Assembly: GCF_006345805.1 (NCBI RefSeq)
Contig: NC_043009.1
Span: forward strand, 59,892,001 to 59,956,000
Reading direction: 5' to 3'
DNA from: Octopus sinensis
Taxonomy: Eukaryota
Length of the DNA stretch: 64,000 nucleotides
A program made the translations under genes and the position numbers. The notes under the pieces were generated by a model. That model was given only the letters and a program-made list of their open reading frames with translations. It was not told the DNA's origin and searched no databases. Below, in pieces: positions 5,180 through 64,000 of the stretch; position 1 is the stretch's first letter; each line of letters opens with the position of its first letter.

Positions 5180-5810
5180 TTGTGGCACCAGTGCCGGTGG
5201 CACACGAGAAAACCATCCGAACGTGGCCGTAGCCAGTGCCGCGCTGACTGGCCTCCATGCTGTGGGCACGTAACAATCACCATCCGATCGTGGCCGATCG
5301 CCAGCCTCATCTGGCTCCTGTGTCGGTGGCACATAAAAAACACCATCCGAGTGTGGTCGTCTGCTAGCCTTGTCTGGCACCTGTGTCGGTGGCACATAAA
5401 AACACCATCCGAGCGTGGCTGTTCGCCAGCCTCGTCTGGCACCTGTGTCGGTGGCACATAAAAACACCATCCGAGCGTGGCCGTTCGCCAGCCTCGTCTG
5501 GCACCTGTGTCGGTGGCACATAAAAATACCATCCGAGCGTGGCCGTTCGCCAGCCTCGTCTGGCACCTGTGTCGGTGGCACATAAAAACACCATCTGAGC
5601 GTGGCCGTTCGCCAGCCTTGTCTGGCACCTGTGTCGGTGGCACATAAAATCACCCACTACACTCTCGGAGTGGTTGGCGTTAGGAAGGGCATCCAGCTGT
5701 AGAAACACTGCCAGATCTGACTGGCCTGGTGCAGCCTTCGGGCTCCCCAGACCCCAGTTGAACCGTCCAACCCATGCTAGCATGGAAAGCGGACGTTAAA
5801 TGATGATGAT
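5180..5810 (+). mobile_element. SINE family D with internal 62-bp tandem expansion
   Basis: Units begin at 5278, 5341, 5403, 5465, 5527, 5589, followed by the family D body and (GAT)n tail. Confidence 0.88.
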
Positions 5811-9520: not shown

Positions 9521-9553
<33 letters not shown>

Positions 9554-9590
9554 TTATATTATATAGATTTATATTATATTTATATTTATT
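7968..9590. repeat. Degenerate (TA)/(TG) microsatellite field, ~1.6 kb, in intron 1
   Basis: Continuous TATATG-type low-complexity sequence; the source of the spurious YIYI ORFs. Confidence 0.95.
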
Positions 9591-9716
9591 TATTTGAAAA
9601 TATTCAAGTGAAAAAATTTTCAGATTTTTTTCTCTTATGAGGTTTTTCACGCTAACTACCTGATAATTTCTTGTTATGATTTCTTATTAAGATTTTATCC
9701 TTAATTGTTAAATTTA

Positions 9717-9747
<31 letters not shown>

Positions 9748-10559
9748 ATGTATGTATATAGCGAGGTCGTTGCAAGTACCGCCGGACTGGCCCCTGTGCT
9801 GGTGGCACGTAAAAGCACCCACTACACTCTCGGAGTGGTTGGCACGAGGAAGGGCATCCAGCTGTAGAAACTCTGCCAGATCAGATTGGAGTCTGGTGCA
9901 GCCATCTGGTTCGCATCCAACCCATGCTAGCATGGAAAGCGGACGTTAAATGACGATAATGATGATGATGATTAACATGTTAGTTTGAAAAGTTTGCATT
10001 ACAGCTACATTTTTATGGGTTCAGTCCCACTGATTAAAAAAACCCTTTGTAGAAATGAGAGAAACCAGAAAAACACATTTAACATATAAATTTTGGTTAA
10101 TGAGCTTCCAATTATTGTTTGTAGTTGTGATACCTGTGCCGGTGGCACATAAAAAGCACCATCTCAGCGTGGCTGATGCCAGCGCCGCCTTGACTGGCTT
10201 CTGTGCCGGTGGCACGTTAAAAGCACTATCCGAACGTGGTCGATGCCAGCGCCGCCTTGACTGTCTTCCGTGCTTGTAGCACGTTAAAAGCACCAACCAA
10301 TTGTGGCCACTGCCAGACTCCCCTGGCATGTAAAAAGCACCCACTAGACTCACGGAGTGGTTGGCGTTAGGAAGGGCATCCAGCTGTAGAAACACTACCA
10401 GATCAGACTGGAGCCTGGTGCAGCCTCCTGGCTTCCCAGACCCCGGTCGAACCGTCCAACCCGTTCTAGCGCGGAAAACAGACGTTAAACGATGATGATG
10501 ATGATGATTATTAATTTCTGTTTCTGTTTTTTTTTGTTTTTTTTACCTTGTATCTGTAG

Positions 10560-11454: not shown

Positions 11455-12185
11455 ACTATAGGCACAAGGTCTGAAATTTTGGGAAAGGAGGCCACTTGAT
11501 TAGATTGGCCCTGAAAGGATGAAAGGCAAAGTCAACCTCAGCGGAATTTGAACTCAGAACGTAACGGCAGATGAAATACCTATTTATTTCTTTACTACCC
11601 ACAAGGGGCTAAACACAGAGAAGACAAACAAGGACAGACAAATGGATTAAGCAGATTACATCGACCCCAGGGCATAACTGGTACTTAATTTATCGACCCC
11701 AAAAGGTTGAAAGGCAAAGTTGACCTCGGCGGAATTTGAACTCAGAACGTAGCAACAGAATAAATACCTATTTCTTTACTACCCACAAGGGGCTAAACAC
11801 AGAGAGGACAAACAAGGACAGACAAACGGATTAAGCCGATTACGTCGACCCCAGTGCATAACTGGTACTTAATTTATCGACCCCAAAAGGTTGAAAGGCA
11901 AAGTTGACCTCGGCGGAATTTGAACTCAGAATGTAAAGACAGAGGAAATACCTATTTCTTTACTACCCACAAGGGGCTAAACACAGAGAGGACAAACAAG
12001 GACAGGCAAACGGATTAAGTCAGTTACATCAACCCCAGTGCATAACTGGTACTTAATTTATCGACCCCAAAAGGATGAAAGGCAAAGTCGACCTCGGCGG
12101 AATTTGAACTCAGAACGTAACGACATATGAAATACAGCTACGCGTTTCGCCCGGCGTGATAACGTTTCTGCCAGCTTGCCATCCT
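11455..12185 (-). mobile_element. SINE family C, tandem concatemer (~3 body units)
   Basis: Repeated ~185-bp body (GCCTTTCATCCTTTCGGGGTCGATAAATTAAGTACCAG on the minus strand, resembling a Meta-type SINE central domain from memory) with one tRNA-like head. Confidence 0.85.
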
Positions 12186-14373: not shown

Positions 14374-16373
14374 GTGGAAATGTTTTCTGTATGAGAATCT
14401 GGGGTCAACAAAGTGGACCTTACATTCAAGCTATGCATTTTGCTTTCGGTATTGGTGCCTTTATTGCCCCACTGTTAGCTAAACCCTTTCTGGCTCCTGT
14501 CATATCAAGCAACATGACACCAATCTTAACCCACCCCCACCTGCACGTGCATATTCCAGGCATGGATGCCAAACAGCATCTGTTATATCTGCGGGACGTT
14601 CCACAACCACTTACCTGGAATCAGTCTACAGGTGGCATCAGCACAACTACCAAATATTTCACTGATAGTAACAGTAGCGTATTGGCAGCGGACAACAGTT
14701 CCCGAACCCGGTACCCTCTGGCGCCAACCCTCACGTCCACATCACCAAGACCGAAAAAACCAAACAGTGCTAATGGAAAATTCCTCAAGAAAAATTTTGC
14801 CGACGGCCAGAACATCAAAACTCATTTGAAGCAATCGGAGAAGAATAAGAATGCAGCAGAGAATCCGCCAAATGTCGTAACGACATCGTCCACCACCTCT
14901 TTGAGTATGACTACGAACAGGTTGGCAGCATCTGCTAACGGTTCAACTGCAACCTCATCTCCTTCCCTGTCTGTAGACTCAGCTTCTGTCACCACTGCTA
15001 ATATTAAAAATACTGGTACTACTACTACTACAACCACTACTCCTACTACTACAACAACAACAAGGAAAGCAACTGCTGCTGCTGCTACTACTCCTACCAC
15101 TGCTACAACTACTACTACTACTTCTACAACTGCTGCCACTGCAGAAAGTAAGGCAGTAGTGACAGCTTCAGTTGGGCCTACACCCTCCTCCATTCTACAG
15201 TTAAGGACCGTAACAAATTATGTGACGAAGCAGAAAATTAACCAGAGTACTTCTGCTGCTGCTAATACTACCACCAATAGTAACCATGTTAGTAGTAGTA
15301 GTAATAGTAACAATGGTGGGAATAACTCAGTATTGACAGGTGGAAATTCTTATTTGCCCTCCAGTAATCAGTCAGTGTCAACGGAAAATCCCGCATTGAC
15401 CACATTCCACCCACAAAAGCCTGAGACATTTGACAAGATGCTGAACAACGCCATCCATGCTGTGAAGGGCATGTCCCACATCCAGTTTGCTTACATGATT
15501 ATCGGCGTTTTGCTCTTTCTTATTAGCATCTTCTTCATGTGTCTCTACTGCTACGACAAATCCTACCAGAGTCCAGTTGCTTATCGGAGCGACCGGAAAC
15601 ACAAGTCATGCTTCGAGGACCAGGGTTTCCGCATCCAGATCCTCATTGCTCTCTTCATATTCTTCTTCATGTATGTCGGCATGGAAGTTACATTTGGCGG
15701 GTTTATAATGATTTTTGCTGTCGAACAGTTTCACTGGAACAAAGACAATAGTGTGATGCTAACATCACTGTTCTGGGGAGCACTTGCTACTGGCCGGGGT
15801 ATATCTATTTTTATTACCAGATGCTGTGTCCCTTGTTGGATGCTCGTTACAAACATCACACTAGTCCTTCTTGCCAGTTTAATCTTATCGTTTGGCCTGT
15901 CTCACTATCAGGTTCTCCTCTGGGTTGGTACTTTACTGTTTGGGCTTGGTCTCTCATCCTTGTTCCCAACAGGGATGTCATGGGCCGAAAGCTACATGAC
16001 AATGACTGGAAAAGCGACAGCTGTCCTGATAGTCGGTTCAGCGTTGGGTGAGATGATACTACCAGCCATTACTGGTTTCTTCTTCACCAAAAAGAAGATG
16101 GTTTTGATGTACATAATGTTCAGCCTCAGCCTGCTTAGTTGTCTGTGTTTCATCATAATGCAGAATCTCGCTTCGAACCAGCATCGCAAGTCAATGAGGA
16201 GCGAGCTTTCGTCCTCACTCGAGCAACAGCAGCAGGTGTCACTGATGAACGGCTCACCTTCCAGCCTGTCCCACGGATGCAACGGCGACCTTACATGTCG
16301 CAAACACGTGACTTTCAAACTCGATCATGACAGGGTCAAATACGACCGGCTCCACTCTTCAGATGAGGAATAA
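14374..16373 (+). CDS. MFSD4B: MFSD4B-like coding exon 3 (GGNVFCMRIWG...stop TAA): TM5, S/T-rich loop, TM6-12
   Basis: TTTTCAG acceptor (AG 14372-14373) completes the phase-1 Gly codon. Contains QAMHFAFGIGAFIAPLLAKPFL and FFFMYVGMEVTFGGFI...LFWGALATGRG...LSSLFPTGMSW, typical of MFSD4/FucP-like MFS. Total CDS 189+286+2000 = 2475 nt = 824 aa plus stop. Confidence 0.92.
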
Positions 16374-24569: not shown

Positions 24570-25310
24570 GCGGCGAGCTGGCAGAAACGTTAGCACGCCG
24601 GGCGAAATGCTTTGTGGTATTTCGTCCGCCGCTGCGTTCTGAGTTCAAATTCCGCCGAGGTCGACTTTACGTTTCATCCTTTCGGGGTCGATAAATTAAG
24701 TACAAGTGACGCACTGGGGTCGATGTAATCGACTTAATCCGTTTGTCTGTACTTGTTTGTCCCCTCTTTGTTTAGCCCCTTGTGGGTAATAAAGAAATAG
24801 GTATTTCGTCTGCCGCTACGTTCTGAGTTCAAATTCCGCCGAGGTCGACTTTGCCTTTCATCCTTTCGGGGTCGATTAAATAAGTACCAGTTACGCACTG
24901 GGGTCGATATAATAGACTTAATCCCTTTGTCTGTCCTTGTTTGTCCGCTCTGTGTTTAGCCACTTGTAGGTAGTGAAGAAATAGGTATTTCGTCTGCCGC
25001 TACGTTCTGAGTTCAAATTCCGCCGATCTCGACTTTGCCTTTCATCCTTTCGGGGTCGATTAAATAAGTACCAGTTACGCACTGGGGTCGATATAATAGA
25101 CTTAATCCCTTTGTCTGTCCTTGTTTGTCCGCTCTGTGTTTAGCCACTTGTAGGCAATAAAGAAATAGGTATTTCTGAGTTCAAATTCCGCGGAGATCGA
25201 CTTTGCCTTTCATCCTTTCGTAATCGATAAATTAAGTACCAGTTTCGCACTGGGGTCGGTCTAATCGACTGGCCCCCTCCCCCAAAATTTCGGGCCTTGT
25301 TCCTTGAGAA
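24570..25310 (+). mobile_element. SINE family C tandem concatemer (~4 body units)
   Basis: One head GGCGAGCTGGCAGAAACGTTAGCACGCCGGGCG followed by repeated GTTCTGAGTTCAAATTCCGCCGAGGTCGAC... bodies. Confidence 0.9.
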
Positions 25311-26504: not shown

Positions 26505-27490
26505 CTATAGGCATAAAGCCTGAAATTAGATCGACCCCAGTACACAACTGGTACTTAATTTATCGACACTAAAATGGTGAAAGACAAAGTCGACCTTGGT
26601 GGAATTCGAACTCAGAACGTAACGGCAGACGAAATACCTATTTCTGTATTGCCCACAAGGGGCTAAACACAGACGGGACAACCAAGGACAGACAAACGGA
26701 TTAAGTCGATTATATCGACCCCAGTACGTAACTGGTACTTATTTAATCGATGCTGAAAGGATGAAAGGCAAAGTCGACCTCGACGGAATTTGAACTCAGA
26801 ACGTAACGGCAGACGAAATACGGCTACGCATTTCGTCCGGCGTGCTAACGTTTCTGCCAGCTCGCCGCCTTGTTATTGTGTATCAAATGATTCTAACCAA
26901 AATTTAAACATCAAAGGTTTCTTAATATGGGAGGTAACTCTAGCTATCTTTACAGCGTTCTACTTTTACGTAATCAATTCTATCTGCTATCGAAAGACGG
27001 CGGCGAGCTGGCAGAATCGATACCGCGCCGAAGAAAAATTGCTTGCAGCATTTCGTCGGCCGTTACGTTATGAGTTCAAATTCCGCCGAGGTCGACTTTG
27101 TCTTTCAACCTTTCAGGGTCGATAAATTAAGTACCAGTTACGCACTGGGGTCAATATAATCGACTTAATCCCTTTGTTTGTCCTTGTTTGTCCCCTCTTT
27201 GTGTTTAGCCCCTTGTGGGCAATTAAAAAATAAGAATCGTTACCGCGCCGAGGAAAAATTGCTTGCAGCATTTCGTCGGCCGTTACGTTATGAGTTCAAA
27301 TTCCGCCGAGGTCGACTTTGTCTTTCAACCTTTCAGGGTCGATAAATTAAGTACCAGTTACGCACTGGGGTCAATATAATCGACTTAATCCCTTTGTTTG
27401 TCCTTGTTTGTCCCCTCTTTGTGTTTAGCCCCTTGTGGGCAATTAAAAAATAAGAATCGTTACCGCGCCGAGGAAAAATTGCTTGGCAGC
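26505..27490. mobile_element. Two oppositely oriented family C SINE clusters (26505-26870 minus; 26998-27490 plus, internally duplicated)
   Basis: Family C motifs on both strands. Confidence 0.85.
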
Positions 27491-27544
27491 ATTTCTTTCG
27501 AATTTACACCACCACTTCCCCCACCACTTCCACAACCACCTCAC

Positions 27545-28130
27545 AACCGGTGTTGGTGGTGGTGGTGGTGGTGGAAGTGACCGTAGTGGAAAAAGTGGTG
27601 GTAGTGGAAGTGGTGGTGGTGGAAATGGTGGTAGTGGAAGTGGTGGTGGTGGTGGTGGAAATGGTGGTGGTGGTGGAAGTGGTGGTAGTTGTGGAAGTGG
27701 TAGTAGTGGAAGCGGTGATGGTGCAAGTGGTGGTGGTAGTGGAAGTGGTGGTGCTGAAAGTGGTGGTGGTGGAAATGGTGGTAGTGGAAGTGATGGTGGT
27801 GGTGGTGGTGGAAGTGGTGGTGCTGGAAGAGGTGCTGATGGTGGAAGTGGTGATGGTGGTAGTGGAAGTGATGATGGTGGAAGTGGTGGTGGTGGAAGTG
27901 GTGATGGTGGAAGTGGTGGTGGTGGAAGTGGTGGTGGTGGAAGTGGTGGTGGTGGAAGTGGTGGTGGTGGAAGTGATGATGGTGGAAGTGGTGGTAGTGG
28001 AATGGTGGTAGTGGAAGTGGTGGTGGTGGGGTGGTGGTGATGGTGGTGATGGTGGACGTAGAGGTGCTAAACGTGGTGGTAGTGGTAATGGAGGTAGTGA
28101 TGGTGATGGTAGAAGTGGTGTTTTTGTGAA
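27545..28130. repeat. (GGT)n/GGAAGT degenerate trinucleotide repeat
   Basis: Seen directly; gives Gly/Val/His-rich pseudo-ORFs. Confidence 0.92.
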
Positions 28131-35590: not shown

Positions 35591-36132
35591 GAGGATACTA
35601 CTATTCATAGATACCGCACTCTAGGAGGGACCCTTGCGGTCAAAACTACTAAAATAAACAAATTGTACCGAATGCAAAACTTCAAAGCAAGTCATTTAAA
35701 AAAAGAATTTAGTTACATATCACCTGTGATTTCGCAATTAATGCAGAATATGCATTCTATGCTCATCAGTGCAACAAACTCAAGACATATAAGAAAAAAC
35801 ATAACATTACAAACCCGACAGCCAACCGTAGAATTCGTCGTAGAATTCGTATATAAATATATATATATATAACATGAATAAATAAATGCACCCTTTTTAA
35901 AGCCTAGCCAGGTTCATGGGCCCGGATTCCCGGTTTCTATGGCATATGTGTTCCCCAGCTGGACGGGACGCCAGTCCATCACAGCGTTACTCATTTTTGT
36001 CAGCTGAGTGAACTGGAGTAACGTGAAATGAAGTGTTTTACTCAAGAACACAACGCGTCGCTCGGTCCAGGAATCGAAACTCACAATCTTACGATCATGG
36101 TGCTGACACCCTAATCACTAAGCCACGCGCCT

Positions 36133-39218: not shown

Positions 39219-39357
<139 letters not shown>

Positions 39358-39361
39358 ATAT

Positions 39362-42300
39362 AAACTGCAGTCTGAGAATTTTCCGGTTGTATTTAGTAAT
39401 GTTTTTATCTCATTTCACTTAATTTATCAAGCTTCTGTATTCCTAGCACATATTTCGCCTTAATGTACTGATATATGAAAAATATATGGCTTGTGTTAGT
39501 AATACCAGCGATTATAATTATTTTTATATTTTTTTATTCTATCGCAATTTGATTTGTTTACATATTTCTCGATAAATTATGAGCGCCAGGCGATATACCA
39601 GAATTCCCTAGTGTTCGGGACGTTCGGAGAGTGTCACGTTAGTAAGTCTGCGCAGTGATATGATTAGTTAGGAAGGTACTCATTAGACGCACATGCTTCT
39701 AGTGAGTTAGGATCCCAGAAAAACAGGGTCTCACTGATGAATTCTCCCTGGGCAAATAAATTATCTTGTTTGCTGAATTAGAAAGAAACTGCAGTCTGAG
39801 AATTTTCCGGTTTAGTAAATGTTTTTATCTTCATTTCACTTAATTTATCAAGCTTCTGTATTCCTAGCACATATTTCGCCTTAATGTACTGATATATGAA
39901 AAATATATGGCTTGTGTTAGTAATACCAGCGATTATAATTATTATTTTTTATTTTTTTATTCTATCGCAATTTGATTTGTTACATATTTCTCGATAAATT
40001 ATGAGCGCCAGGCGATATACCAGAATTCCCTAGTGTTGTCGGGACGTTCGGAGTCTGCGCAGTGATATGATTAGTTAGGAAGAGTAACTCATTAGACGCA
40101 CATGCTTCTAGTGAGTTAGGATCCCAGAAAAACAGGGTCTCACTGATGAATTCTCCCTGGGCAAATAAATTATCTTGTTTGCTGAATTAGAAAGAAACTG
40201 CAGTCTGAGAATTTTCCGGTTTAGTAAATGTTTTTATCTTCATTTCACTTAATTTATCAAGCTTCTGTATTCCTAGCACATATTTCGCCTTAATGTACTG
40301 ATATATGAAAAATATATGGCTTGTGTTAGTAATACCAGCGATTATAATTATTTTTTTTTTATTTTATTCTATCGCAATTTGATTTGTTTACATATTTCTC
40401 GATAAATTATGAGCGCCAGGCGATATACCAGAATTCCCTAGTGTTGTCGGGACGTTCGGAGTCTGCGCAGTGATATGATTAGTTAGGAAGAGTAACTCAT
40501 TAGACGCACATGCTTCTAGTGAGTTAGGATCCCAGAAAAACAGGGTCTCACTGATGAATTCTCCCTGGGCAAATAAATTATCTTGTTTGCTGAATTAGAA
40601 AGAAACTGCAGTCTGAGAATTTTCCGGTTTAGTAAATGTTTTTATCTTCATTTCACTTAATTTATCAAGCTTCTGTATTCCTAGCACATATTTCGCCTTA
40701 ATGTACTGATATATGAAAAATATATGGCTTGTGTTAGTAATACCAGCGATTATAATTATTTTTATATTTTTTTATTCTATCGCAATTTGATTTGTTTACA
40801 TATTTCTCGATAAATTATGAGCGCCAGGCGATATACCAGAATTCCCGTGTTGTCGGGACGTTCGGAGTCTGCGCAGTGATATGATTAGTAGGAAGAGTAA
40901 CTCATTAGACGCACATGCTTCTAGTGAGTTAGGATCCCAGAAAAACAGGGTCTCACTGATGAATTCTCCCTGGGCAAATAAATTATCTTGTTTGCTGAAT
41001 AGAAAGAAACTGCAGTCTGAGAATTTTCCGGTTTAGTAAATGTTTTTATCTTCATTTCACTTAATTTATCAAGCTTCTGTATTCCTAGCACATATTTCGC
41101 CTTAATGTACTGATATATGAAAAATATATGGCTTGTGTTAGTAATACCAGCGATTTAATTATTTTTATATTTTTTATTTATCGCAATTTGATTTGTTTAC
41201 ATATTTCTCGATAAATTATGAGCGCCAGGCGATATACCAGAATTCCTAGTGTTGTCGGGACGTTCGGAGTCTGCGCAGTGATATGATTAGTTAGGAAGAG
41301 TAACTCATTAGACGCACATGCTTCTAGTGAGTTAGGATCCCAGAAAAACAGGGTCTCACTGATGAATTCTCCCTGGGCAAATAAATATCTTGTTTGCTGA
41401 ATAGAAAGAAACTGCAGTCTGAGAATTTTCCGGTTTAGTAAATGTTTTTATCTTCATTTCACTTAATTTATCAAGCTTCTGTATTCCTAGCACATATTTC
41501 GCCTTAATGTACTGATATATGAAAAATATATGGCTTGTGTTAGTAATACCAGCGATTATAATTATTTTTATATTTTTTTATTCTATCGCAATTTGATTTG
41601 TTTACATATTTCTCGATAAATTATGAGCGCCAGGCGATATACCAGAATTCCCTAGTGTTGTCGGGACGTTCGGAGTCTGCGCAGTGATATGATTAGTTAG
41701 GAAGAGTAACTCATTAGACGCACATGCTTCTAGTGAGTTAGGATCCCAGAAAAACAGGGTCTCACTGATGAATTCTCCTGGGCAAATAAATTATCTTGTT
41801 TGCTGAATTAGAAAGAAACTGCAGTCTGAGAATTTTCCGGTTTAGTAAATGTTTTTATCTTCATTTCACTTAATTTATCAAGCTTCTGTATTCCTAGCAC
41901 ATATTTCGCCTTATGTACTGATATATGAAAAATATATGGCTTGTGTTAGTAATACCAGCGATTATAATTATTTTTTTTTTTTTTATCGCAATTTGATTTG
42001 TTTACATATTTCTCGATAAATTATGAGCGCCAGGCGATATACCAGAATTCCCTAGTGTTGTCGGGACGTTCGGAGTCTGCGCAGTGATATGATTAGTTAG
42101 GAAGAGTAACTCATTAGACGCACATGCTTCTAGTGAGTTAGGATCCCAGAAAAACAGGGTCTCACTGATGAATTCTCCCTGGGCAAATAAATTATCTTGT
42201 TTGCTGAATTAGAAAGAAACTGCAGTCTGAGAATTTTCCGGTTTAGTAAATGTTTTTATCTTCATTTCACTTAATTTATCAAGCTTCTGTATTCCTAGCA

Positions 42301-45240
42301 CATATTTCGCCTTAATGTACTGATATATGAAAAATATATGGCTTGTGTTAGTAATACCAGCGATTATAATTATTTTTATATTTTTTTATTCTATCGCAAT
42401 TTGATTTGTTTACATATTTCTCGATAAATTATGAGCGCCAGGCGATATACCAGAATTCCCTAGTGTTGTCGGGACGTTCGGAGTCTGCGCAGTGATATGA
42501 TTAGTTAGGAAGAGTAACTCATTAGACGCACATGCTTCTAGTGAGTTAGGATCCCAAAAAAACAGGGTCTCACTGATGAATTCTCCCTGGGCAAATAAAT
42601 TATCTTGTTTGCTGAATTAGAAAGAAACTGCAGTCTGAGAATTTTCCGGTTTAGTAAATGTTTTTATCTTCATTTCACTTAATTTATCAAGCTTCTGTAT
42701 TCCTAGCACATATTCGCCTTAATGTACTGATATATGAAAAATATATGGCTTGTGTTAGTAATACCAGCGATTATAATTATTTTTTTTATTCTATCGCAAT
42801 TTGATTTGTTTACATATTTCTCGATAAATTATGAGCGCCAGGCGATATACCAGAATTCCCTAGTGTTGTCGGGACGTTCGGAGTCTGCGCAGTGATATGA
42901 TTAGTTAGGAAGAGTAACTCACTAGACGCACATGCTTCTAGTGAGTTAGGATCCCAGAAAAACAGGGTCTCACTGATGAATTCTCCCTGGGCAAATAAAT
43001 TATCTTGTTTGCTGAATTAGAAAGAAACTGCAGTCTGAGAATCGTCCGGTTTAGTAAATGTTTTTATCTTCATTTCACTTAATTTATCAAGCTTCTGTAT
43101 TCCTAGCACATATTTCGCCTTAATGTACTGATATATGAAAAATATATGGCTTGTGTTAGTAATACCAGCGATTATAATTATTTTTTTTTATTCTATCGCA
43201 ATTTGATTTGTTTACATATTTCTCGATAAATTATGAGCGCCAGGCGATATACCAGAATTCCCTAGTGTTGTCGGGACGTTCGGAGTCTGCGCAGTGATAT
43301 GATTAGTTAGGAAGAGTAACTCATTAGACGCACATGCTTCTAGTGAGTTAGGATCCCAGAAAAACAGGGTCTCACTGATGAATTCTCCCTGGGCAAATAA
43401 ATTATCTTGTTTGCTGAATAGAAAGAAACTGCAGTCTGAGAATTTTCCGGTTTAGTAAATGTTTTTATCTTCATTTCACTTAATTTATCAAGCTTCTGTA
43501 TTCCTAGCACATATTTCGCCTTAATGTACTGATATATGAAAAATATATGGCTTGTGTTAGTAATACCAGCGATTATAATTATTTTTATTTTTTATTCTAT
43601 CGCAATTTGATTTGTTTACATATTTCTCGATAAATTATGAGCGCCAGGCGATATACCAGAATTCCCTAGTGTTGTCGGGACGTTCGGAGTCTGCGCAGTG
43701 ATATGATTAGTTAGGAAGAGTAACTCATTAGACGCACATGCTTCTAGTGAGTTAGGATCCCAGAAAAACAGGGTCTCACTGATGAATTCTCCCTGGGCAA
43801 ATAAATTTCTTGTTTGCTGAATAGAAAGAAACTGCAGTCTGAGAATTTTCCGGTTTAGTAAATGTTTTTATCTTCATTTCACTTAATTTATCAAGCTTCT
43901 GTATTCCTAGCACATATTTCGCCTTAATGTACTGATATATGAAAAATATATGGCTTGTGTTAGTAATACCAGCGATTATAATTATTTTATTTTTTTATTC
44001 TATCGCAATTTGATTTGTTTACATATTTCTCGATAAATTATGAGCGCCAGGCGATATACCAGAATTCCCTAGTGTTGTCGGGACGTTCGGAGTCTGCGCA
44101 GTGATATGATTAGTTAGGAGAGAGTAACTCATTAGACGCACATGCTTCTAGTGAGTTAGGATCCCAGAAAAACAGGGTCTCACTGATGAATTCTCCCTGG
44201 GCAAATAAATTATCTTGTTTGCTGAATTAGAAAGAAACTGCAGTCTGAGAATTTTCCGGTTTAGTAAATGTTTTTATCTTCATTTCACTTAATTTATCAA
44301 GCTTCTGTATTCCTAGCACATATTTCGCCTTAATGTACTGATATAAAAAATATATGGCTTGTGTTAGTAATACCAGCGATTATAATTATTTTTATTTTTT
44401 TATTCTATCGCAATTTGATTTGTTTACATATTTCTCGATAAATTATGAGCGCCAGGCGATATACCAGAATTCCCTAGTGTTGTCGGGACGTTCGGAGTCT
44501 GCGCAGTGATATGATTAGTTAGGAAGAGTAACTCATTAGACGCACATGCTTCTAGTGAGTTAGGATCCAGAAAAACAGGGTCTCACTGATGAATTCTCCC
44601 TGGGCAAATAAATTATCTTGTTTGCTGAATTAGAAAGAAACTGCAGTCTGAGAATTTTCCGGTTAGTAAATGTTTTTATCTTCATTTCACTTAATTTATC
44701 AAGCTTCTGTATTCCTAGCACATATTTCGCCTTAATGTACTGATATATGAAAAATATATGGCTTGTGTTAGTAATACCAGCGATTATAATTATTTTTATA
44801 TTTTTTTATTCTATCGCAATTTGATTTGTTTACATATTTCTCGATAAATTATGAGCGCCAGGCGATATACCAGAATTCCCTAGTGTTGTCGGGACGTTCG
44901 GAGTCTGCGCAGTGATATGATTAGTTAGGAAGAGTAACTCATTAGACGCACATGCTTCTAGTGAGTTAGGATCCCAGAAAAACAGGGTCTCACTGATGAA
45001 TTCTCCCTGGGCAAATAAATTATCTTGTTTGCTGAATTAGAAAGAAACTGCAGTCTGAGAATTTTCCGGTTTAGTAAATGTTTTTATCTTCATTTCACTT
45101 AATTTATCAAGCTTCTGTATTCCTAGCACATATTTCGCCTTAATGTACTGATATATGAAAAATATATGGCTTGTGTTAGTAATACCAGCGATTATAATTA
45201 TTTTTATATTTTTTTATTCTATCGCAATTTGATTTGTTTA
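39362..45240 (+). repeat. Tandem array of ~405-bp units (14 full + ~0.5) with one hammerhead ribozyme per unit; putative non-LTR retrozyme/ribozyme satellite
   Basis: Unit starts (AAACTGCAG) at 39362, 39786, 40195, 40603, 41007, 41409, 41816, 42217, 42625, 43025, 43426, 43829, 44235, 44638, 45045. Units are near-identical; (TA)n lies on both sides. Confidence 0.97.
39715..39810 (+). ncRNA. Type I hammerhead ribozyme (first of 14 copies)
   Basis: Stem I TCTCA(39729-33)/TGAGA(39797-801); core CTGATGA 39734-40; stem II TTCT(39742-45)/AGAA(39780-83) plus an inner hairpin GCAAATA/TGTTTGC; GAAAC 39785-89, loop TGCA, GTC 39794-96 (cleavage after 39796). Equivalent sites at 40205, 40613, 41017, 41419, 41826, 42227, 42635, 43035, 43436, 43839, 44245, 44648, 45055. 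Confidence 0.88.
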
Positions 45241-45581
45241 TATATATATATATATATATTACTCAAATTCCGACTTCGCCTGATTTTCACGTTTTTATTA
45301 CAACCTTATGTAATTAAATAATGATATAAATTATATAAGATGATATAATATAATGAAATGATAGAATATTAGGTGTCCATTCTGATTGAACTAGTACTTT
45401 CATGCATTAAACTACGCAATCTTCAGGTTCATGTAGTAGTGGTGACAGTTATGTTTTACATATGCGTGTGTATGTATGTAATTATTCAATTTTATTTCAA
45501 GATTTCTTGACAATAGAGAAAGAGCCGGTTTCTAACCTAGAGCCAAGTCTTTTTCATTGGAATTTCAACACCAACAACATG

Positions 45582-47178: not shown

Positions 47179-47589
47179 CTCTCATCCGAAAATAAAATAG
47201 ACCAATCAAAGGCACGCCAGCGTACATATTTATATGTGTATATGTGTGAGTGCGCGCGTGCGCGCGTGTTTATAACACAGAACGATACAGGTGTATCAAA
47301 TACCATATACTATAAATTTTTGAATTATTTAAGTATCTCCGCCTCTAGAGAATGTATCCTAATGATCAAATTACAATTAAAATTAATCCCAGTCGAGGAG
47401 ACACACATTCACACATACATCCCCCCCCTGACACACACATACACATACACCCACACCGGAGCTTAATCTGATGATTTTTTTTATGCCTCCTTTTCTTAGA
47501 AACAGTCAACGGCGATGGAGAGCATAAAGTTTATAATTGAAAAAGTTAGCTGATATGAAAGACTAGAAGCCATTTGAATATTGGAAACT

Positions 47590-48189: not shown

Positions 48190-49552
48190 CTTTACTGCTC
48201 ACAAGGGGCTACTCACAGAGGAGACAAACAAGGTCAGACAAACGGATTAAGTAGATTACATCGACGCCAGTGCGTAACTGGTACTTAATTTATCGACCCC
48301 GAAAGGATGAAAGGCAAAGTCGACCTCGGCGGAATTTGAACTCACAACGTAACGACAGGTGAAATACCGCTAAGCATTTCGCCCGGCGTGCTAACGTTTC
48401 TACCAGCTCGCTCCTGGTGTTCATGTCACTACCGGGAGATAATCGCCGTCGGGAGTGATTTCTGCCTTCATTGGCCTTGTCAATGGTAGACGCCCAAAGC
48501 TAGAGATAACAATGATTCCTCCGTCAGTGATATACATAGAATCAATCTCAGTGTCTAATCAGGTACTGGCATCTCAAAGAGCCAGTGGACCTAATAATGG
48601 CTTTAAATTTTGGCATATTTTGAGGGAGTTTGAGGGAGGGGCTGAGTCGATTAAATCTATCCCAGTGTTCAAATTGTACTTATTTTATCGATCTCGAAAA
48701 GATGAATAGTTTAGTCGACCACGATGGAATTTGAACTTAGAACATGAAGACGGACGAAACACCGCTAAGCATTTTGCCAGTTCGCCGCCAACAATGGACT
48801 CAATAAGAATCCTTTCTCCTAAAGGCACAAATCCCCAAACTTTGGGGTAGGTGGATATATTTTTACATCGATCCCCAGTACTCAACTGGTACTTATTTTA
48901 TCGGCCCCGAAAAGGATGAAAGACAAAGTCGACTGCGATGGAATTTGAACTCAGAATGTGAAGATGGACAAAATACCTATTTCTTTACTACCCACAAGGG
49001 GCTAAACACAGAGGGGACAAACAAGGACAGACAAACGGATTAAGTCGATTACATCGACCCCATTGAGTAACTGGTACTTATTTAATCGACCCCGAAAGGA
49101 TGAAAGGCAAAGTCGACCTCGGCGGAATTTGAACTCAGAACGTAACGGCAGACGAACTTTACACCTCACAAGGGACTAAACACAAAGAGGACAAACGGAT
49201 TAAGTCGATTATATCGACGCTAGTGCGTAACTGGTACTTATTATTCGACCCCGAAAGGATGAAAGGCAAAGTCGACCTTGGCGGAATTTGAACTCAGAAC
49301 GTAGCGGCAGACGAGATACCTATTTCTTTACACCTCACAAGAGGCTAAACACAGAGAGGACAAACAAGGACAGACAAACGGATTAAGTCGATTATATCGA
49401 TCCTAGTGCGTAACTGGTACTTATTTAATCGACCCCGAAAGGATGAAAGGCAAAGTCAACCTCGGCGGAATTTGAACTCAGAACGTAGCGGCAGACGAAA
49501 TACTGCCAGGCACATCGCCCGGCGTGGTAACGTTTCTGCCAGCTCGCCGCTA
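48190..49552 (-). mobile_element. Cluster of family C SINEs, including a ~4-unit concatemer (48850-49552)
   Basis: Repeated ATCGACCCCGAAAGGATGAAAGGCAAAGTCGACCTCGGCGG. Confidence 0.88.
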
Positions 49553-50189
49553 AAAGTGGGCTTAATTATAATAAAGAATCGGATACACTGCTAATTTCCA
49601 CCATGCCTAAACGATAAGAAAGAAAAGAATAAACCCAGAAAACAAAACGCTTTATTACTCCAATCATGCTATATCATTCAATAAGACAATGTAGAATTTA
49701 TTGATTTCTCAGCAAAAAATCAACAACCACACAAGGAAGAATCTTATCTGAGATTTAAACAACCAAGGTTAAGCACTAACTAAGGGTGTCAGTAAAAACA
49801 ACAGAAAATTCAATTCTTTAGAGTTATTAAAAAATCAATAATGTTAATGTATCAATGAGAGAGAAGAGCGTTTTATAGTTTTTGGCAGGAGACACTCACT
49901 TCATACGTTTCTTAAAAAGAGGAAAAGAAAGAGAGAGGAACAAAAACTATTGATTTGAAATCAAGACCTATGAGATGTTAGTCAAGCACTATACCTACTC
50001 AGCCTTTTCGCATGTGTATGTACGGATAGTTTTAACTGTTCTGCTACCCGGCAGCCCAGCAACCCTCTACTCCGTGGTGGGCCGCATGCCAAAATTCCAA
50101 AATGCTTAGCAGAAACAAGATCAAAAAACGAGATCGATCGGTGTTTGTAGAAAAATCTAAGAAATGAATCTGTTCGGTGAAGTGTATTG

Positions 50190-50202
50190 TGATGTGTGTG
50201 TA

Positions 50203-50253
<51 letters not shown>

Positions 50254-50955
50254 GTTGTATATGTGTTTGTGTGTGTGTTGGAAATTTTGGGCTTGTGTGT
50301 GTGTGTGTGTTTGTGTATGTGTGTGTGTGTGTTTGTGTATGTGTGTGTGTATGTGTGTGTGGTGTTTGTGTATGTGTTTGAGTGTGTGTCGGGATTTTGG
50401 GGCTTGTGTGTGTGTGTGTTTGTGTGTGTGTGTATGTGTGTGCGTGTATTGTGTGTATGTGTGTGTGTGTGTATGTGTGTGCGTGTATGTGTGTGTATGT
50501 GTGTATGTGTGTGTGTGTATGTGTGTTGTGTATGTGTGTGGTGTTTGTGTATGTGTTTGAGTGTGTCGGGAATTTTGGGCTTGTGTGGGTTTGTGTGTGT
50601 GGTGTGTGTGTATATGTGTGTGTGTGTGTTTGTGTATGCGTTTGAGTGTGTGTTGGGAATTTTGGGCTTGTGTGTGTGTGTGTTTGTGTATGTGTGTATG
50701 TGTGTGTGTGTATGTGTGTGTGTATGTGTGTGTGTGTTTGTGTATGTGTTTGAGTGTGTGTCGGGAATTTTGGGCTTGTGTGTGTGTGTTTGTGTGTGTG
50801 TGTATGTGTGTGCGTGTATGTGTGTGTATGTGTGTGTGTGTATGTGTGTGCGTGTATGTGTGTGTATGTGTGTATGTGTGTGTGTGTATGTGTGTGTGTA
50901 TGTGTGTGTGTGTTTGTGTATGTGTTTGAGTGTGTGTCGGGAATTTTGGGCTTGT

Positions 50956-51000
<45 letters not shown>

Positions 51001-51070
51001 TGGTTGTATATGTGTTTGTGTGTGTGTTGGAAATTTTGGGCTTGTGTGTGTGTGCATGTGTGTGTGTGTG
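50190..51070. repeat. (TG)n-rich minisatellite punctuated by GG(G)AATTTTGGGCTTG, 7 copies
   Basis: Spacer at ~50280, 50390, 50567, 50655, 50761, 50938, 51028. Confidence 0.88.
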
Positions 51071-51753
51071 CAGGTGTTTAGTATGTGTATATAGTGTTTG
51101 AACATGCTGTGTCTGTGTATGTGTGTATGCGGTGCGTGGTGTATGTGTGTGTGTTTAGTGTGTTTGTGTGTATGTTTGTATATGTGATGTATGGTGTGTG
51201 TGCTGCGTTCTTGTGTTTTCTGTATGCATATGCAGTGTGCATATTACAGGAAGTGTGTGTGTATGTGTGTGTGTGTGTACATGTGGATAACGTGTGTGTG
51301 TGTGTGTATGGTATGTGCATGAGTATAATGTGTATCTGTGAGGTATGTTTATGGATATATGTGTGTATGTGTATTTATATACGTATTTGTTAATGTGTGT
51401 GTCTGTTTATATGTGTATGTGTCTGGTGTGGATATGTTTTTGTTATCAAAATTATTTGTTTGGTTTGGGAGAAAGAACTGTGCACATTGTTTTCACCGAT
51501 CCCCAGAGACTGGCGAGATCGATAGATCGAAGCCGTTGATGTTTTATTTAAACAATTACAGTTGTAAGGAAAAACGTGCAGGAACGGATTGCAAAGGGCG
51601 AACGTTCTTTCATGAAAAAAAAAAAGACTTTAGCGTAGTAAGGAACGATAAGGGTGACGGGAGGAGGAAAAAATGAATGAATCGGTGAAATAAACATGAG
51701 ACTAGCTGCCTCTGAGGAGCCGAGGCCCTTGTAATAGCGGTCAAATTAGGGAG

Positions 51754-62804: not shown

Positions 62805-64000
62805 GAGGTGTGCTCCTTAAAGATTTGCCCTGAACCACTTCCCAAGTACTGGGATAAATGAAACTTGTCATAATTATTAGTCCTTCTCTACATAGCCACC
62901 ACCAATGGTGATACACTTCTCCCATCGCTTTATGCAGCTGTGAGGACCTCGTTTGTAGAAGTCAGTAGGTTGCAGCTAGAGCCAAGACTTTACCTTAGAA
63001 ATAAGTTCGTCATCACCCGAAAACTGCTTCACCTTCAAAAAAGACTTCATGGTTGGAAAGAGGTGGAAATCAGACAGTGCAAGGTCGGGAGAATAAGCGG
63101 GATGAGGAAGGATTTCATAGCTACAGGAGTGTACTTTCATCTGGGCAGCATGTGTATTTCGGACTGGGACGTTGTCTTGGAGAAGGCAGACTCCTTTGGT
63201 CAGGATACCACACCTCTCTGCCTTAATGGCGTACCGCAATTTCTGCATTAGAGAAGCATAATACACTCCGTTAATTGTGGTGCCCTTTGCCAGTAAATCC
63301 ATCATCATTACTCCGCGTTGCTCCCATAATATTATGAGCGTCACCTTGCCTGCTGAGGGTTGGACACGAGCCGTCTTTGGAGGTGGTGTGTAATCATGCT
63401 TTGTTGTTTGTTCCTTCTCGAGCCAAACCTGGCTCATAAGGGCCGGTTTCCCGGTTTCCTTGGCGTATAGGTTCCCCACCTGGACGGAACGCCGGTCGGT
63501 CGCAGGTGAGCTGAAAGATGCAGGAAGAAAGAGTGAGAGAAAGTTGTGGCGAAAGAGCCAGCAGAAGTTCGCCATTACCTTCAGCCGGAGCCGCGTGGAG
63601 CTTAGGTGTTTCGCTCATAAACACACACATCGCCCAGTCTGAGATTCGAACCCGCGAGTCCGCTGCTCTAACAACTAGGCCATGTAATCATGCTTCCATT
63701 ACTTCGATTGGACTTTGGTCTCAGGATCACAGTGGTGGACTCATGTTTCATCCTGTGTGATAAGTCTGCCGAAAAAGACCACTTCGTTTTCTTGGTACAT
63801 TGCCAAAAGAGCCTGGGAGCAAATGACTCGTTCCTGTTTCTGAAAAGGTGTGAACATCCGGGGAATCCATCATGTAGACAATTTCCCCATGTGCAAATTG
63901 TCGTGAGTGATTTTTTTTGCACGGACCCTACACTTGTCCTCATTCCTTGCGATAGTTGCCGAATAGTTATGCGGTGAACCTCCAAAATGGCGGCTTTCAC
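62804..64000 (-). mobile_element. Decayed mariner (DD34D) transposon, runs off window end
   Basis: QDETWVHH...QWKH|DY...SAGKV...LLQDN-(34 aa)-YSPDLALSDFHLF...RWEKCITIGGGYVEK*; premature stop at 62976, frameshifts; terminus TA|TGAGG at 62802-62808. Confidence 0.93.
63402..63682 (-). mobile_element. Chimeric SINE (family E-like head, family F-like tail) inserted in the mariner ORF
   Basis: 13-bp TSD TGTAATCATGCTT at 63389-63401 and 63683-63695. Confidence 0.9.

What the first reader, a model, noticed from the sequence alone, without database searches (positions are those of the whole stretch)
39362..45240. Tandem ~405-bp array with an intact type I hammerhead ribozyme in every unit: candidate octopus non-LTR retrozyme / circRNA-producing satellite
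Seen: 14 complete copies of TCTCA-CTGATGA-[stem II]-GAAAC-TGCA-GTC-TGAGA, with the catalytic core and stem I invariant in all 14. Predicted GUC cleavage after 39796, 40205, 40613, 41017, 41419, 41826, 42227, 42635, 43035, 43436, 43839, 44245, 44648 and 45055, giving 13 monomers of 400-409 nt. No meaningful ORF. Established: tandem repeats with type I hammerheads occur as newt satellite 2, Schistosoma Sm-alpha, cave-cricket pDo500 and the non-LTR retrozymes of several metazoans, where + strand transcripts self-cleave to monomers that can circularise. Inference: this is such an element, a non-coding mobile RNA amplified via RNA/rolling-circle intermediates. I cannot verify whether this family has been described in cephalopods.
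Basis: partly seen in the sequence, partly recalled or inferred. Interest (0 to 1): 0.95.

Follow-up and report, generated by a model that had tools for sequence, protein, structure and literature searches.

The report
Octopus tandem repeat with hammerhead ribozymes
A 5.9-kb stretch of octopus DNA is 14.5 head-to-tail copies of a ~407-base non-coding unit that each carry a hammerhead self-cutting RNA motif, which fits a class of small mobile elements ("retrozymes") already known in mussels, corals and salamanders, though this ribozyme has an unusual flaw and its activity is untested.

Summary
A tandem array lies at 39362-45245 with 14.5 units of about 407 bp. No ORF exceeds 56 aa.

The window is from Octopus vulgaris or a very close relative: a neighbouring ORF is 99% identical to an O. 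vulgaris protein.

The anatomy matches metazoan non-LTR retrozymes:
- unit size about 407 bp and GC 35%;
- one + strand HHR per unit;
- a two-base-pair helix III with the palindrome ACUGCAGU, which favours a double hammerhead;
- (TA)n on both flanks;
- recently active Penelope-like elements reported in this species.

"Intact" overstates the case:
- The most conserved stem pair (10.1-11.1) is an A·A mismatch.
- Helix II is a 42-44-nt interrupted stem.
- Rfam Hammerhead_1 scores 24 bits against a threshold of 34.
- A model built from four validated retrozyme HHRs does not lift the motif above noise.
- Core invariance says nothing, because units 2-14 are almost identical throughout.

I found no other copies, transcripts or family members with these tools.

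Verdict: a probable new member of a known kind. Catalytic activity and circRNA production are unproven. Interest is moderate to low.

The parts
39219..39362 (.). Left flank: (TA)72 microsatellite that abuts the first base of the array
   Evidence: TRF row 39219-39362, period 2; sequence read
39362..45245 (+). Whole tandem array, 14.5 units of about 407 bp (consensus 407 nt, GC 34.6%)
39362..39372 (+). Array start: 3' half of a hammerhead (AAACUGCAGUC) with no upstream core. This GUC site has no ribozyme in cis.
39373..39796 (+). Unit 1, a divergent 424-nt variant. It has 4-nt and 17-nt insertions and about 6 other changes, all outside the hammerhead.
39797..45055 (+). Units 2-14, 13 near-identical monomers of 400-409 nt bounded by GUC sites
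45056..45240 (+). Truncated unit 15 (185 nt). It ends inside the monomer's ...GATTTGTTTA(CATAT) stretch, where it merges with (TA)n.
45239..45258 (.). Right flank: short (TA)10 tract
39729..39801 (+). Hammerhead 1 (helix I 5' strand to helix I 3' strand), cleavage after 39796
40138..40210 (+). Hammerhead 2, cleavage after 40205. This copy was used for the fold calculations.
40546..40618 (+). Hammerhead 3, cleavage after 40613. Rfam RF00163 19.9 bits.
40951..41022 (+). Hammerhead 4 (variant with a T deleted in the helix II internal loop), cleavage after 41017. Rfam RF00163 24.2 bits.
41354..41424 (+). Hammerhead 5 (T-deletion variant), cleavage after 41419. Rfam RF00163 24.3 bits.
41760..41831 (+). 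Hammerhead 6, cleavage after 41826
42160..42232 (+). Hammerhead 7, cleavage after 42227
42568..42640 (+). Hammerhead 8, cleavage after 42635
42968..43040 (+). Hammerhead 9, cleavage after 43035
43370..43441 (+). Hammerhead 10 (T-deletion variant), cleavage after 43436
43774..43844 (+). Hammerhead 11 (T-deletion variant), cleavage after 43839
44178..44250 (+). Hammerhead 12, cleavage after 44245
44581..44653 (+). Hammerhead 13, cleavage after 44648
44988..45060 (+). Hammerhead 14, cleavage after 45055

Best explanation
The array is a non-autonomous, non-coding, retrozyme-type tandem repeat in the genome of Octopus vulgaris or a very close relative. Each unit of about 407 bp encodes, on the + strand, a type-I hammerhead with an atypical helix II.

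Proposed mechanism:
1. The array is transcribed as a + strand multimer.
2. Helix III is only A-U/C-G closed by the self-complementary UGCA. Two hammerheads, from adjacent units or from two molecules, therefore pair their ACUGCAGU segments into an 8-bp helix and swap helix I strands. This is the double hammerhead known from newt and axolotl repeats.
3. Cleavage after GUC releases monomers of about 407 nt with 5'-OH and 2',3'-cyclic phosphate ends.
4. The host tRNA ligase RtcB circularises them.
5. The circles or multimers are copied by the reverse transcriptase of an autonomous Penelope-like element into tandem cDNA, which is integrated, here into a (TA)n microsatellite.

Shown here: the tandem anatomy, the complete core and three-helix topology, the palindromic helix III with a computed preference for the dimer, the lack of coding capacity, the (TA)n flanks and the octopus origin.

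Inferred from the family: transcription, cleavage, ligation, reverse transcription and mobility.

The A·A mismatch at 10.1-11.1 makes me expect slow cleavage at best, probably dependent on the dimer. I put about even odds on these particular copies being catalytically active.
For: Anatomy:
- 14.5 units, period about 408, 97% matches.
- 14 motifs, each with CUGAUGA, GAAAC and GUC, a 5-bp helix I (UCUCA/UGAGA), a closed helix II and a closed helix III.

Chance:
- The descriptor hits only these sites in the window and 0-1 per 20 Mb of random sequence.
- Rfam's best family for the motif is Hammerhead_1, full-length match to model positions 1-45, E=0.018 for 6.6 kb across all 4227 families.

Dimer:
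- The double-hammerhead constraint gives -45.7 kcal/mol.
- Two single hammerheads give 2 x -14.4, and the unconstrained dimer MFE is -49.1.

Class features:
- GC is 34.6%, against <45% for the class (PMC7229834).
- Mussel units are about 350-390 bp.
- All four experimentally validated retrozyme HHRs have a palindromic helix III. The mussel's GAAAC-GCGC-GUC has the same format as GAAAC-UGCA-GUC here.
- Axolotl HHR_Amex2 has a U·U mismatch at the base of helix II, yet cleaves 22% per hour as a monomer and efficiently as a dimer.
- No ORF exceeds 56 aa, and there is no RT or GIY-YIG domain in any ORF of 73 aa or more in the window.

Target and partner:
- (TA)n lies on both sides, and PLEs show insertion bias for microsatellites including (TA)n (PMC8557442).
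- O. vulgaris has 30 recently active Penelope families with 329 insertions (PMC13282606).
- Retrozymes co-occur with PLEs and are related to their pLTRs (bioRxiv 10.64898/2026.07.22.740005).
- The four variable columns inside the 73-nt hammerhead all fall in predicted loops. Small numbers and a homopolymer bias make this weak.
Against: - Rfam at gathering thresholds finds nothing. The best score is 24.3 bits against 34, and the majority variant scores 19.9. Scaled to a genome of about 2.8 Gb, scores like these are expected a few to tens of times by chance.
- A covariance model from four validated retrozyme HHRs scores the motif at 9.3 bits, E about 2.6, within the noise.
- 10.1-11.1 is A·A. 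It is the most conserved stem pair, and U·U is reported as the most active mismatch.
- Helix II is 42-44 nt with a 3x3 internal loop and a G·G mismatch, so the canonical loop 1-loop 2 contact cannot be assigned.
- The hammerhead fold is not the minimum-energy fold: -14.4 against -20.6 kcal/mol. An 8-bp alternative, GAAUUCUC/GAGAAUUU, competes with helices I and II.
- The circular monomer is not unusually stable (z about -1.6 on both strands), whereas the class is described as 'highly self-paired'.
- I found no second copy or fragment of the monomer elsewhere in the 64 kb.
- I found no match in metagenome, viral or prokaryote contig collections, nor among 5.8 billion predicted proteins using its six-frame peptides.
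- Near-identity of units 2-14, a divergent edge unit, and a variant shared by units 4, 5, 10 and 11 fit DNA-level unequal crossing-over as well as RNA-mediated amplification.
- A (TA)n target has a chance probability of about 0.03-0.08 in this TA-rich neighbourhood.
Confidence: 0.6

Rival explanations
1. This is a relic. The unit descends from a hammerhead-bearing element (a retrozyme or a PLE derivative), but this array is now an ordinary young minisatellite. It was expanded at the DNA level by unequal crossing-over or replication slippage. Its ribozyme is crippled by the A·A mismatch, so it produces no cleaved or circular RNA.
For: - A·A at the most conserved stem pair.
- Scores are below threshold.
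- A competing fold is more stable.
- Units 2-14 are almost identical and the edge unit is divergent, which is typical of homogenised satellites. One variant is shared by units 4, 5, 10 and 11, which suggests a block duplication.
- No other copies in the window.
Against: - A U·U mismatch at the same position is compatible with activity in axolotl retrozymes, especially as dimers.
- Every other core and helix element is intact in all 14 copies.
- The palindromic helix III gives a stable double hammerhead.
- Recently active PLEs exist in the species.
Confidence: 0.25
2. This is an ordinary AT-rich tandem repeat in which a hammerhead-like string arose by chance. It has no ribozyme ancestry.
For: - The Rfam score is below the curated threshold. 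After scaling, matches of 20-24 bits are expected several times per genome of this size.
- The independent covariance model does not separate the motif from noise.
- The 14 copies are effectively one observation.
Against: - The descriptor gives about 1 hit or fewer per 20 Mb of random sequence, which is under about 6e-5 per 408-nt unit.
- The motif coincides with several independent class features: tandem units of the right size and GC, a palindromic helix III (1/16 by chance given AC...GU), a (TA)n target and + strand uniformity.
Confidence: 0.08
3. The array is part of an autonomous Penelope-like element, namely its pseudo-LTR or tandem region with its own hammerheads, and is not a separate non-autonomous element.
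For: - PLEs carry type-I HHRs in tandemly arranged pLTRs and prefer microsatellite targets.
- Retrozymes and pLTRs are homologous in Xenopus.
Against: - No reverse transcriptase or GIY-YIG domain in any of 150 stop-to-stop ORFs of 73 aa or more across the window.
- 14.5 uniform short units with no internal coding region.
- PLE hammerheads are described as minimal variants, whereas this one has a long helix II.
Confidence: 0.05

Closest known systems
Metazoan non-LTR retrozymes (Cervera & de la Peña 2020, PMC7229834), especially the Mytilus galloprovincialis repeat of about 350-390 bp (construct Mg353)
   Same: - Both come from molluscs.
- Head-to-tail non-coding units of a few hundred bp.
- Low GC: 36.8% in Mg353, 34.6% here.
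- One + strand type-I HHR per unit.
- Identical core strings: TCA-CTGATGA, GAAAC and GTC-TG.
- Helix III is a 2-bp stem with a palindromic tetraloop: ACGCGCGU in the mussel, ACUGCAGU here.
- The host genome contains PLEs.
   Different: - Helix II is 4 bp plus a 5-nt loop in the mussel. Here it is 42-44 nt, interrupted, and starts with A·A.
- No sequence similarity outside the core.
- Expression, cleavage (kobs about 0.1 per min) and circles are demonstrated for the mussel and untested here.
- The mussel has about 5000 copies. Only one locus is seen here.
Axolotl HHR_Amex2 / Rtz_353 and newt satellite 2 hammerheads
   Same: - A weak helix III with a palindromic loop.
- Activity mainly as dimers.
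- HHR_Amex2 has a mismatch (U·U) at the base of helix II, the same position as the A·A here.
- Tandem repeats of 330-350 bp.
   Different: - The mismatch is U·U there, the best tolerated one, and A·A here.
- Helix II is short there.
- The hosts are vertebrates.
- Copy numbers there are very high, about 60,000 per family.
Minimal type-I hammerheads of Penelope-like elements (Cervera & de la Peña 2014)
   Same: - Type-I topology.
- Tandem occurrence.
- Proposed dimeric action.
- Microsatellite target bias, including (TA)n.
- PLEs are the probable source of the reverse transcriptase.
   Different: - Those lie within or next to an RT plus GIY-YIG ORF and are minimal. Here there is no such ORF.
- Helices I and II here are long.
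Rfam RF00163 Hammerhead_1
   Same: - Best-scoring Rfam family for the motif.
- Full-length alignment to model positions 1-45, with core and helices I and III matching.
   Different: - The score is 19.9-24.3 bits, against a gathering score of 34.
- A 28-29-nt insertion in loop 2.
- A non-canonical first pair in helix II.

Membership tests
Hammerhead ribozyme, type I (RF00163) | Conserved catalytic core CUGANGA ... GAAA ... with cleavage after a non-G H17 (RUH) | tested here: met
   CUGAUGA, GAAAC and GUC are present in all 14 copies
Hammerhead ribozyme, type I (RF00163) | Three-helix junction with helix I open and helices II and III closed | tested here: met
   - Helix I is UCUCA/UGAGA and can be extended by GGG/UCC and AAAC/GUUU.
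- Helix II is closed by a hairpin.
- Helix III is AC/GU plus UGCA.
Hammerhead ribozyme, type I (RF00163) | Watson-Crick pair at 10.1-11.1 (base of helix II) | tested here: not met
   - The pair is an A·A mismatch in all copies. cmscan marks it as non-canonical, and the constrained fold agrees.
- U·U is the only mismatch I found reported in natural active HHRs.
Hammerhead ribozyme, type I (RF00163) | Score at or above Rfam's gathering threshold (34 bits) | tested here: not met
   - 0 matches at gathering thresholds.
- 24.3, 24.2 and 19.9 bits in E-value mode.
Hammerhead ribozyme, type I (RF00163) | Tertiary contact between loop 1 (helix I) and loop 2 (helix II) | tested here: inconclusive
   A 4-nt bulge (AUUU) lies 5 bp up helix I, and a CCC/AUU internal loop lies about 5 positions up helix II. 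They are geometrically placed like loops 1 and 2, but no conserved contact nucleotides can be assigned from one sequence.
Hammerhead ribozyme, type I (RF00163) | Mg2+-dependent self-cleavage | not testable with these tools
   Needs an in vitro transcription and cleavage assay
Metazoan non-LTR retrozyme | Head-to-tail tandem repeats of about 150-450 bp (up to about 1 kb), from dimers to large multimers | tested here: met
   14.5 units of 400-424 bp
Metazoan non-LTR retrozyme | One type-I HHR per unit, all in the same polarity | tested here: met
   - 14 motifs, all on the + strand and none on the - strand.
- This is subject to the hammerhead caveats in the rows above.
Metazoan non-LTR retrozyme | Low GC (<45%), non-coding, no LTR/PBS/PPT features | tested here: met
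   - GC 34.6%.
- ORFs of 56 aa or less.
- Uniform units without terminal repeats.
Metazoan non-LTR retrozyme | Short helix III with a palindromic loop, allowing dimeric hammerheads | tested here: met
   - ACUGCAGU is self-complementary.
- The double hammerhead is about 17 kcal/mol better than two single ones.
- The four validated retrozyme HHRs have the same format.
Metazoan non-LTR retrozyme | HHR recognisably similar to validated retrozyme HHRs | tested here: inconclusive
   - A covariance model built from the coral, mussel and two axolotl HHRs gives 9.3 bits, E about 2.6, within the noise.
- The model has only 4 sequences and penalises the long helix II insertion heavily.
Metazoan non-LTR retrozyme | Dispersed multicopy family in the genome (evidence of mobility) | not testable with these tools
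   - No other copy in the 64-kb window.
- No octopus genome is available to search. Pattern and peptide searches of the available collections found nothing.
Metazoan non-LTR retrozyme | Expressed as linear and circular monomeric RNAs | not testable with these tools
   No transcriptome access. The peptide route into assembled public runs gave no hit.
Metazoan non-LTR retrozyme | Coexistence with autonomous Penelope-like elements in the host genome | tested here: met
   - From the literature only: 30 recently active Penelope families with 329 insertions in O. vulgaris (PMC13282606).
- None within this window.
Penelope-like element (pLTR region) | Adjacent ORF with reverse transcriptase and a GIY-YIG endonuclease | tested here: not met
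   A Pfam scan of 150 ORFs of 73 aa or more found only MFS transporter and mariner transposase domains

The most novel reading that the evidence does not exclude
The octopus unit is an active retrozyme whose hammerhead is a structural subclass that current models miss. It has a purine-purine A·A at 10.1-11.1 and a roughly 15-bp interrupted helix II, whose internal loop, rather than a terminal loop 2, contacts a bulge in helix I. It works only as a double hammerhead. If so, hammerhead-bearing circRNA elements are under-counted by Rfam and by descriptor searches, and cephalopods carry an unrecognised family of abundant ribozyme-derived circRNAs.
Probability: 0.2. Interest if true: 0.5.

Novelty: new member of a known kind. 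Interest (0 to 1): 0.35.

Why it matters
If confirmed, this extends non-LTR retrozymes to cephalopods. No paper in the searchable library describes a hammerhead or a retrozyme in this group.

It would also add a natural hammerhead with an A·A at the position considered the most conserved stem pair. That would test how far dimeric action and peripheral contacts can compensate for a core-adjacent defect.

In practice it would flag a class of repeat that the recent O. vulgaris repeat annotation does not mention, and that could yield abundant small circRNAs.

It does not open a new kind of biology. The class, its mechanism and its wide invertebrate distribution, molluscs included, are already published.

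Tried and rejected
1. Rfam at gathering thresholds over the whole window gave no match.
2. An exact-pattern scan for TCACTGATGA-N30-55-GAAACTGCAGTCTGA in metagenome, viral and prokaryote genome contigs gave 0 hits each. None of these collections is expected to hold octopus DNA.
3. An exact look-up of 8 array ORFs and 2 flank ORFs among 15 billion proteins found none.
4. A search of 5.8 billion proteins with all consensus six-frame peptides of 20 aa or more, aimed at reaching assembled octopus runs, scored nothing.
5. blastn and nhmmer of the monomer against the rest of the window gave only low-complexity noise.
6. A covariance model from four validated retrozyme HHRs did not discriminate the motif. 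Its top hit at 35740-35775(-) lacks GAAA and helix III, so I rejected it as chance.
7. I considered alternative registers that would restore a 10.1-11.1 pair (an extra A after A9, or using the first GAAA of AGAAAGAAAC). I rejected them by inspection because helix II or helix III then fails to pair.
8. ARAGORN found no tRNA-like part in the unit. I judged a weak resemblance to an A/B box too poor to report as a promoter.
9. Comparison with the mussel and coral retrozyme sequences showed no similarity beyond the core.
10. My first dinucleotide-shuffle script hung and timed out. I replaced it with first-order Markov simulation.

Full report
OBSERVATION

Tandem Repeats Finder reports a single array at 39362-45245: period 408, 14.5 copies, 97% matches, 1% indels. 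A direct scan finds 14 complete copies of TCTCA-CTGATGA-[42-44 nt]-GAAAC-TGCA-GTC-TGAGA on the + strand.

The array opens with the 3' half of a motif (AAACTGCAGTC, GUC ending at 39372). The first unit (39373-39796) is a 424-nt variant with a 4-nt and a 17-nt insertion and about six smaller changes. The last unit is cut after 185 nt.

The longest ATG/GTG/TTG ORF in the array is 56 aa.

IS IT MORE THAN CHANCE?

Units 2-14 differ from one another at only 1-7 alignment columns. Most differences are single-base deletions in short homopolymers, which may partly be long-read assembly errors. The "invariant core in all 14" is therefore one observation, not fourteen. It says nothing about selection.

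The question is whether one 407-nt unit would contain such a motif by chance. I wrote a descriptor with these requirements:
- a 5-bp helix I;
- CUGANGA;
- 4 consecutive helix II pairs, allowing a 10.1/11.1 mismatch;
- GAAA;
- a helix III of at least 2 bp, or a palindrome;
- a non-G H17.

It hits only the 14 array sites in the window on either strand. It gave 0 hits in 20 Mb of Markov sequence with the monomer's composition and 1 hit in 20 Mb with the window's composition. That is under about 6e-5 per unit, although I wrote the descriptor after seeing the motif.

Rfam gives a cooler picture. Nothing reaches a gathering score. In E-value mode the best family is Hammerhead_1 (RF00163), aligned over all 45 model positions. 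It scores 24.3 and 24.2 bits for the variant with a T deleted in helix II, and 19.9 bits for the majority variant, against a threshold of 34. The E-value of 0.018 covers 6.6 kb and all 4227 families. Scaled to a genome of about 2.8 Gb for this one family, a few to tens of such scores are expected by chance.

A covariance model I built from the four experimentally validated retrozyme hammerheads (coral Amil224, mussel Mg353, axolotl Ax353 and Ax330; sequences from the supplement of PMC7229834; alignment; model) scores the octopus motif at only 9.3 bits, E about 2.6, inside the noise.

The motif alone is therefore not a confident hammerhead by curated standards. The case for it rests on the motif together with its context.

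ANATOMY OF THE RIBOZYME

**Core:** C3-A9 is CUGAUGA, G12-A14 is GAA, and cleavage follows GUC.

**Helix I:** It is UCUCA/UGAGA. In the constrained fold it continues past a 4-nt bulge (AUUU) into GGG/UCC and AAAC/GUUU.

**Helix III:** It is A15.1-U16.1 and C15.2-G16.2, closed by UGCA. The eight bases ACUGCAGU are therefore self-complementary.

**Helix II is unusual.** Position 10.1 is A and 11.1 is A, a mismatch that cmscan flags. This is followed by:
- UUCU/AGAA;
- a CCC/AUU internal loop;
- a U-A pair;
- a G·G mismatch;
- a 9-bp stem, GGCAAAUAA/UUGUUUGCU;
- a hexaloop, AUUAUC.

Perreault et al..1-11.1 the most conserved base pair after A15.1-U16.1. They note that U·U supports more activity than any other mismatch (PMC3088659). 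Axolotl HHR_Amex2 has that U·U. It cleaves 22% in an hour as a monomer and efficiently as a dimer (PMC7229834). So there is a precedent for a mismatch at this position in an active retrozyme hammerhead, but A·A is expected to be worse.

**Thermodynamics:** In a 93-nt segment:
- single hammerhead: -14.4 kcal/mol;
- minimum-energy fold: -20.6 kcal/mol, using a competing 8-bp pairing GAAUUCUC/GAGAAUUU;
- double hammerhead, with an intermolecular 8-bp helix III and swapped helix I strands: -45.7 kcal/mol;
- two single hammerheads: -28.8 kcal/mol;
- unconstrained dimer optimum: -49.1 kcal/mol.

If the ribozyme works, it should work as a dimer, like the newt and axolotl repeats.

CONTEXT

The window is octopus. 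The 660-aa MFS-type ORF at 14391-16373 is 99% identical over its full length to an Octopus vulgaris protein on an 84-Mb scaffold.

The consensus unit is 407 nt with 34.6% GC. The circular monomer is not unusually stable (z about -1.6 on both strands).

The array sits between a (TA)72 tract (39219-39362) and a (TA)10 tract (45239-45258), as if inserted near one end of a single microsatellite. Perfect (TA)n tracts cover 3.1% of the window and 7.7% of the nearest 5 kb on each side, so this is only modest evidence.

Both junctions fall at points of microhomology: A-rich GAAAC on the left, and ACATAT merging into TATAT on the right.

No other copy or fragment of the unit occurs in the window. None of 150 stop-to-stop ORFs of 73 aa or more across the window has a reverse transcriptase or GIY-YIG domain. 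Only the MFS gene and a mariner-type transposase remnant were found.

COMPARISON WITH WHAT IS KNOWN

Cervera and de la Peña (PMC7229834) defined metazoan non-LTR retrozymes as short tandem repeats (about 150-450 bp, GC below 45%, dimers to large multimers). Each unit carries a type-I hammerhead. The repeats are transcribed, self-cleaved, and circularised mainly by RtcB. They are thought to be copied into tandem cDNA by the reverse transcriptase of an autonomous non-LTR element, with Penelope-like elements the leading candidate.

That work demonstrated the elements in a coral, the mussel Mytilus galloprovincialis and the axolotl. It also reports similar repeats in many other invertebrate phyla.

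The mussel element is the closest comparison:
- It is also from a mollusc.
- Its units are about 350-390 bp, and construct Mg353 has 36.8% GC.
- It shares the strings TCA-CTGATGA, GAAAC and GTC-TG.
- Its helix III, ACGCGCGU, has the same two-pair-plus-palindromic-tetraloop format as ACUGCAGU here.

All four validated hammerheads have a palindromic helix III.

The octopus motif differs in three ways:
- Helix II is long and interrupted.
- The base of helix II is an A·A mismatch.
- There is no sequence similarity beyond the core, which the authors say is the rule between species.

[quoted passage not shown] PLEs show insertion bias for microsatellites, including (TA)n (PMC8557442). A 2026 repeat annotation lists 30 recently active Penelope families with 329 insertions in O. 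vulgaris, and it mentions no ribozymes or retrozymes (PMC13282606).

Full-text searches for hammerhead or retrozyme together with octopus, cephalopod, squid or Sepia found no description of such an element.

MOST LIKELY EXPLANATION

The array is a retrozyme-type element of O. vulgaris or a close relative. The tandem anatomy, the core and topology, the dimer-favouring palindrome, the lack of coding capacity, the target and the host are shown. Transcription, cleavage, circularisation, reverse transcription and mobility are inferred from the family.

I put about 0.6 on this reading. Within it, I give about even odds that these copies still cleave.

The main rival (0.25) is that the unit has ribozyme ancestry but the array is now an inert minisatellite expanded by unequal crossing-over. 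Three things fit DNA-level growth: the near-identity of units 2-14, the divergent edge unit, and a T deletion shared by units 4, 5, 10 and 11. The A·A mismatch could be disabling.

A purely fortuitous motif (0.08) and membership of an autonomous PLE (0.05) are less likely. The remainder is unassigned.

WHAT COULD NOT BE DONE

No octopus genome or transcriptome could be searched with these tools. Pattern scans of the metagenome, viral and prokaryote collections, exact look-ups of the array's ORFs, and a peptide search meant to reach assembled public sequencing runs all returned nothing. All three remain open.

One caution for follow-up: on a tandem array, divergent RT-PCR and junction-spanning reads cannot separate circles from linear multimers. 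Gel behaviour, RNase R resistance and end chemistry are needed.

VERDICT

The array is probably a new, cephalopod member of a known class, with an atypical and possibly weakened hammerhead. Interest is 0.35.

Noticed in passing
window 11514-12135, 24616-25270, 48884-49499 (period 184) and 27013-27495 (period 220): Four short tandem arrays (2.2-3.6 copies) of one repeat family, present in both orientations. The unit contains GAGTTCAAATTCCGCCGAGGTCGACTTTGCCTTTCATCC, which looks like a tRNA-derived SINE arranged in tandem. ARAGORN and Rfam find no tRNA there.
   Followed up: partly
window 14391-16373 (+): An uninterrupted 660-aa ORF with an MFS_1 domain. It is 99% identical to an Octopus vulgaris 'sodium-dependent glucose transporter 1'-like protein and 76% identical to an Argonauta hians protein. 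It identifies the source organism.
   Followed up: yes
window 62976-63575 (-): A 199-aa ORF with a mariner-type Transposase_1 (DDE) domain, E=9e-15. It is probably a Tc1/mariner remnant.
   Followed up: partly
window 8056-9593 and 50188-51202; also 34-39 kb: Very long dinucleotide microsatellites: (TA)n of about 1.5 kb and (TG)n of about 1 kb. There is also a dense cluster of (TA)n tracts in the 5 kb upstream of the array, which weakens the significance of the array's (TA)n flanks.
   Followed up: partly
window 5265-5654 and 10134-10316: GC-rich minisatellites of 62 and 67 bp (6.3 and 2.7 copies) with related units (...CACCATCC.A.CGTGGCCG...GCCAGC...). Nature unknown.
   Followed up: no
window 39373-39796 versus 39797-45055: - The edge unit is a distinct 424-nt variant.
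- A one-base T deletion in the helix II internal loop is shared by units 4, 5, 10 and 11, six units apart, which hints at a block duplication inside the array.
- Most other differences between units are single-base indels in homopolymers and could be assembly errors.
   Followed up: partly
window 40148-40155 with 40207-40214 (and the same positions in every unit): GAAUUCUC (the last two core bases plus the helix II 5' strand) can pair with GAGAAUUU (the helix I 3' strand and the three bases after it). This gives a more stable alternative to the hammerhead fold and could act as an on/off conformational switch.
   Followed up: partly
window 35740-35775 (-) and 47468-47503 (+): Isolated CUGAUGA-containing strings. 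One has hairpin-like helices I and II but no GAAA or helix III, and the other is CTGATGA-N-GAAAC only. I judged both to be chance matches.
   Followed up: yes
window 27549-28120: A GGT/GGA-rich minisatellite of about 570 bp (periods 15, 30 and 45) directly after the 220-bp SINE-like tandem.
   Followed up: no
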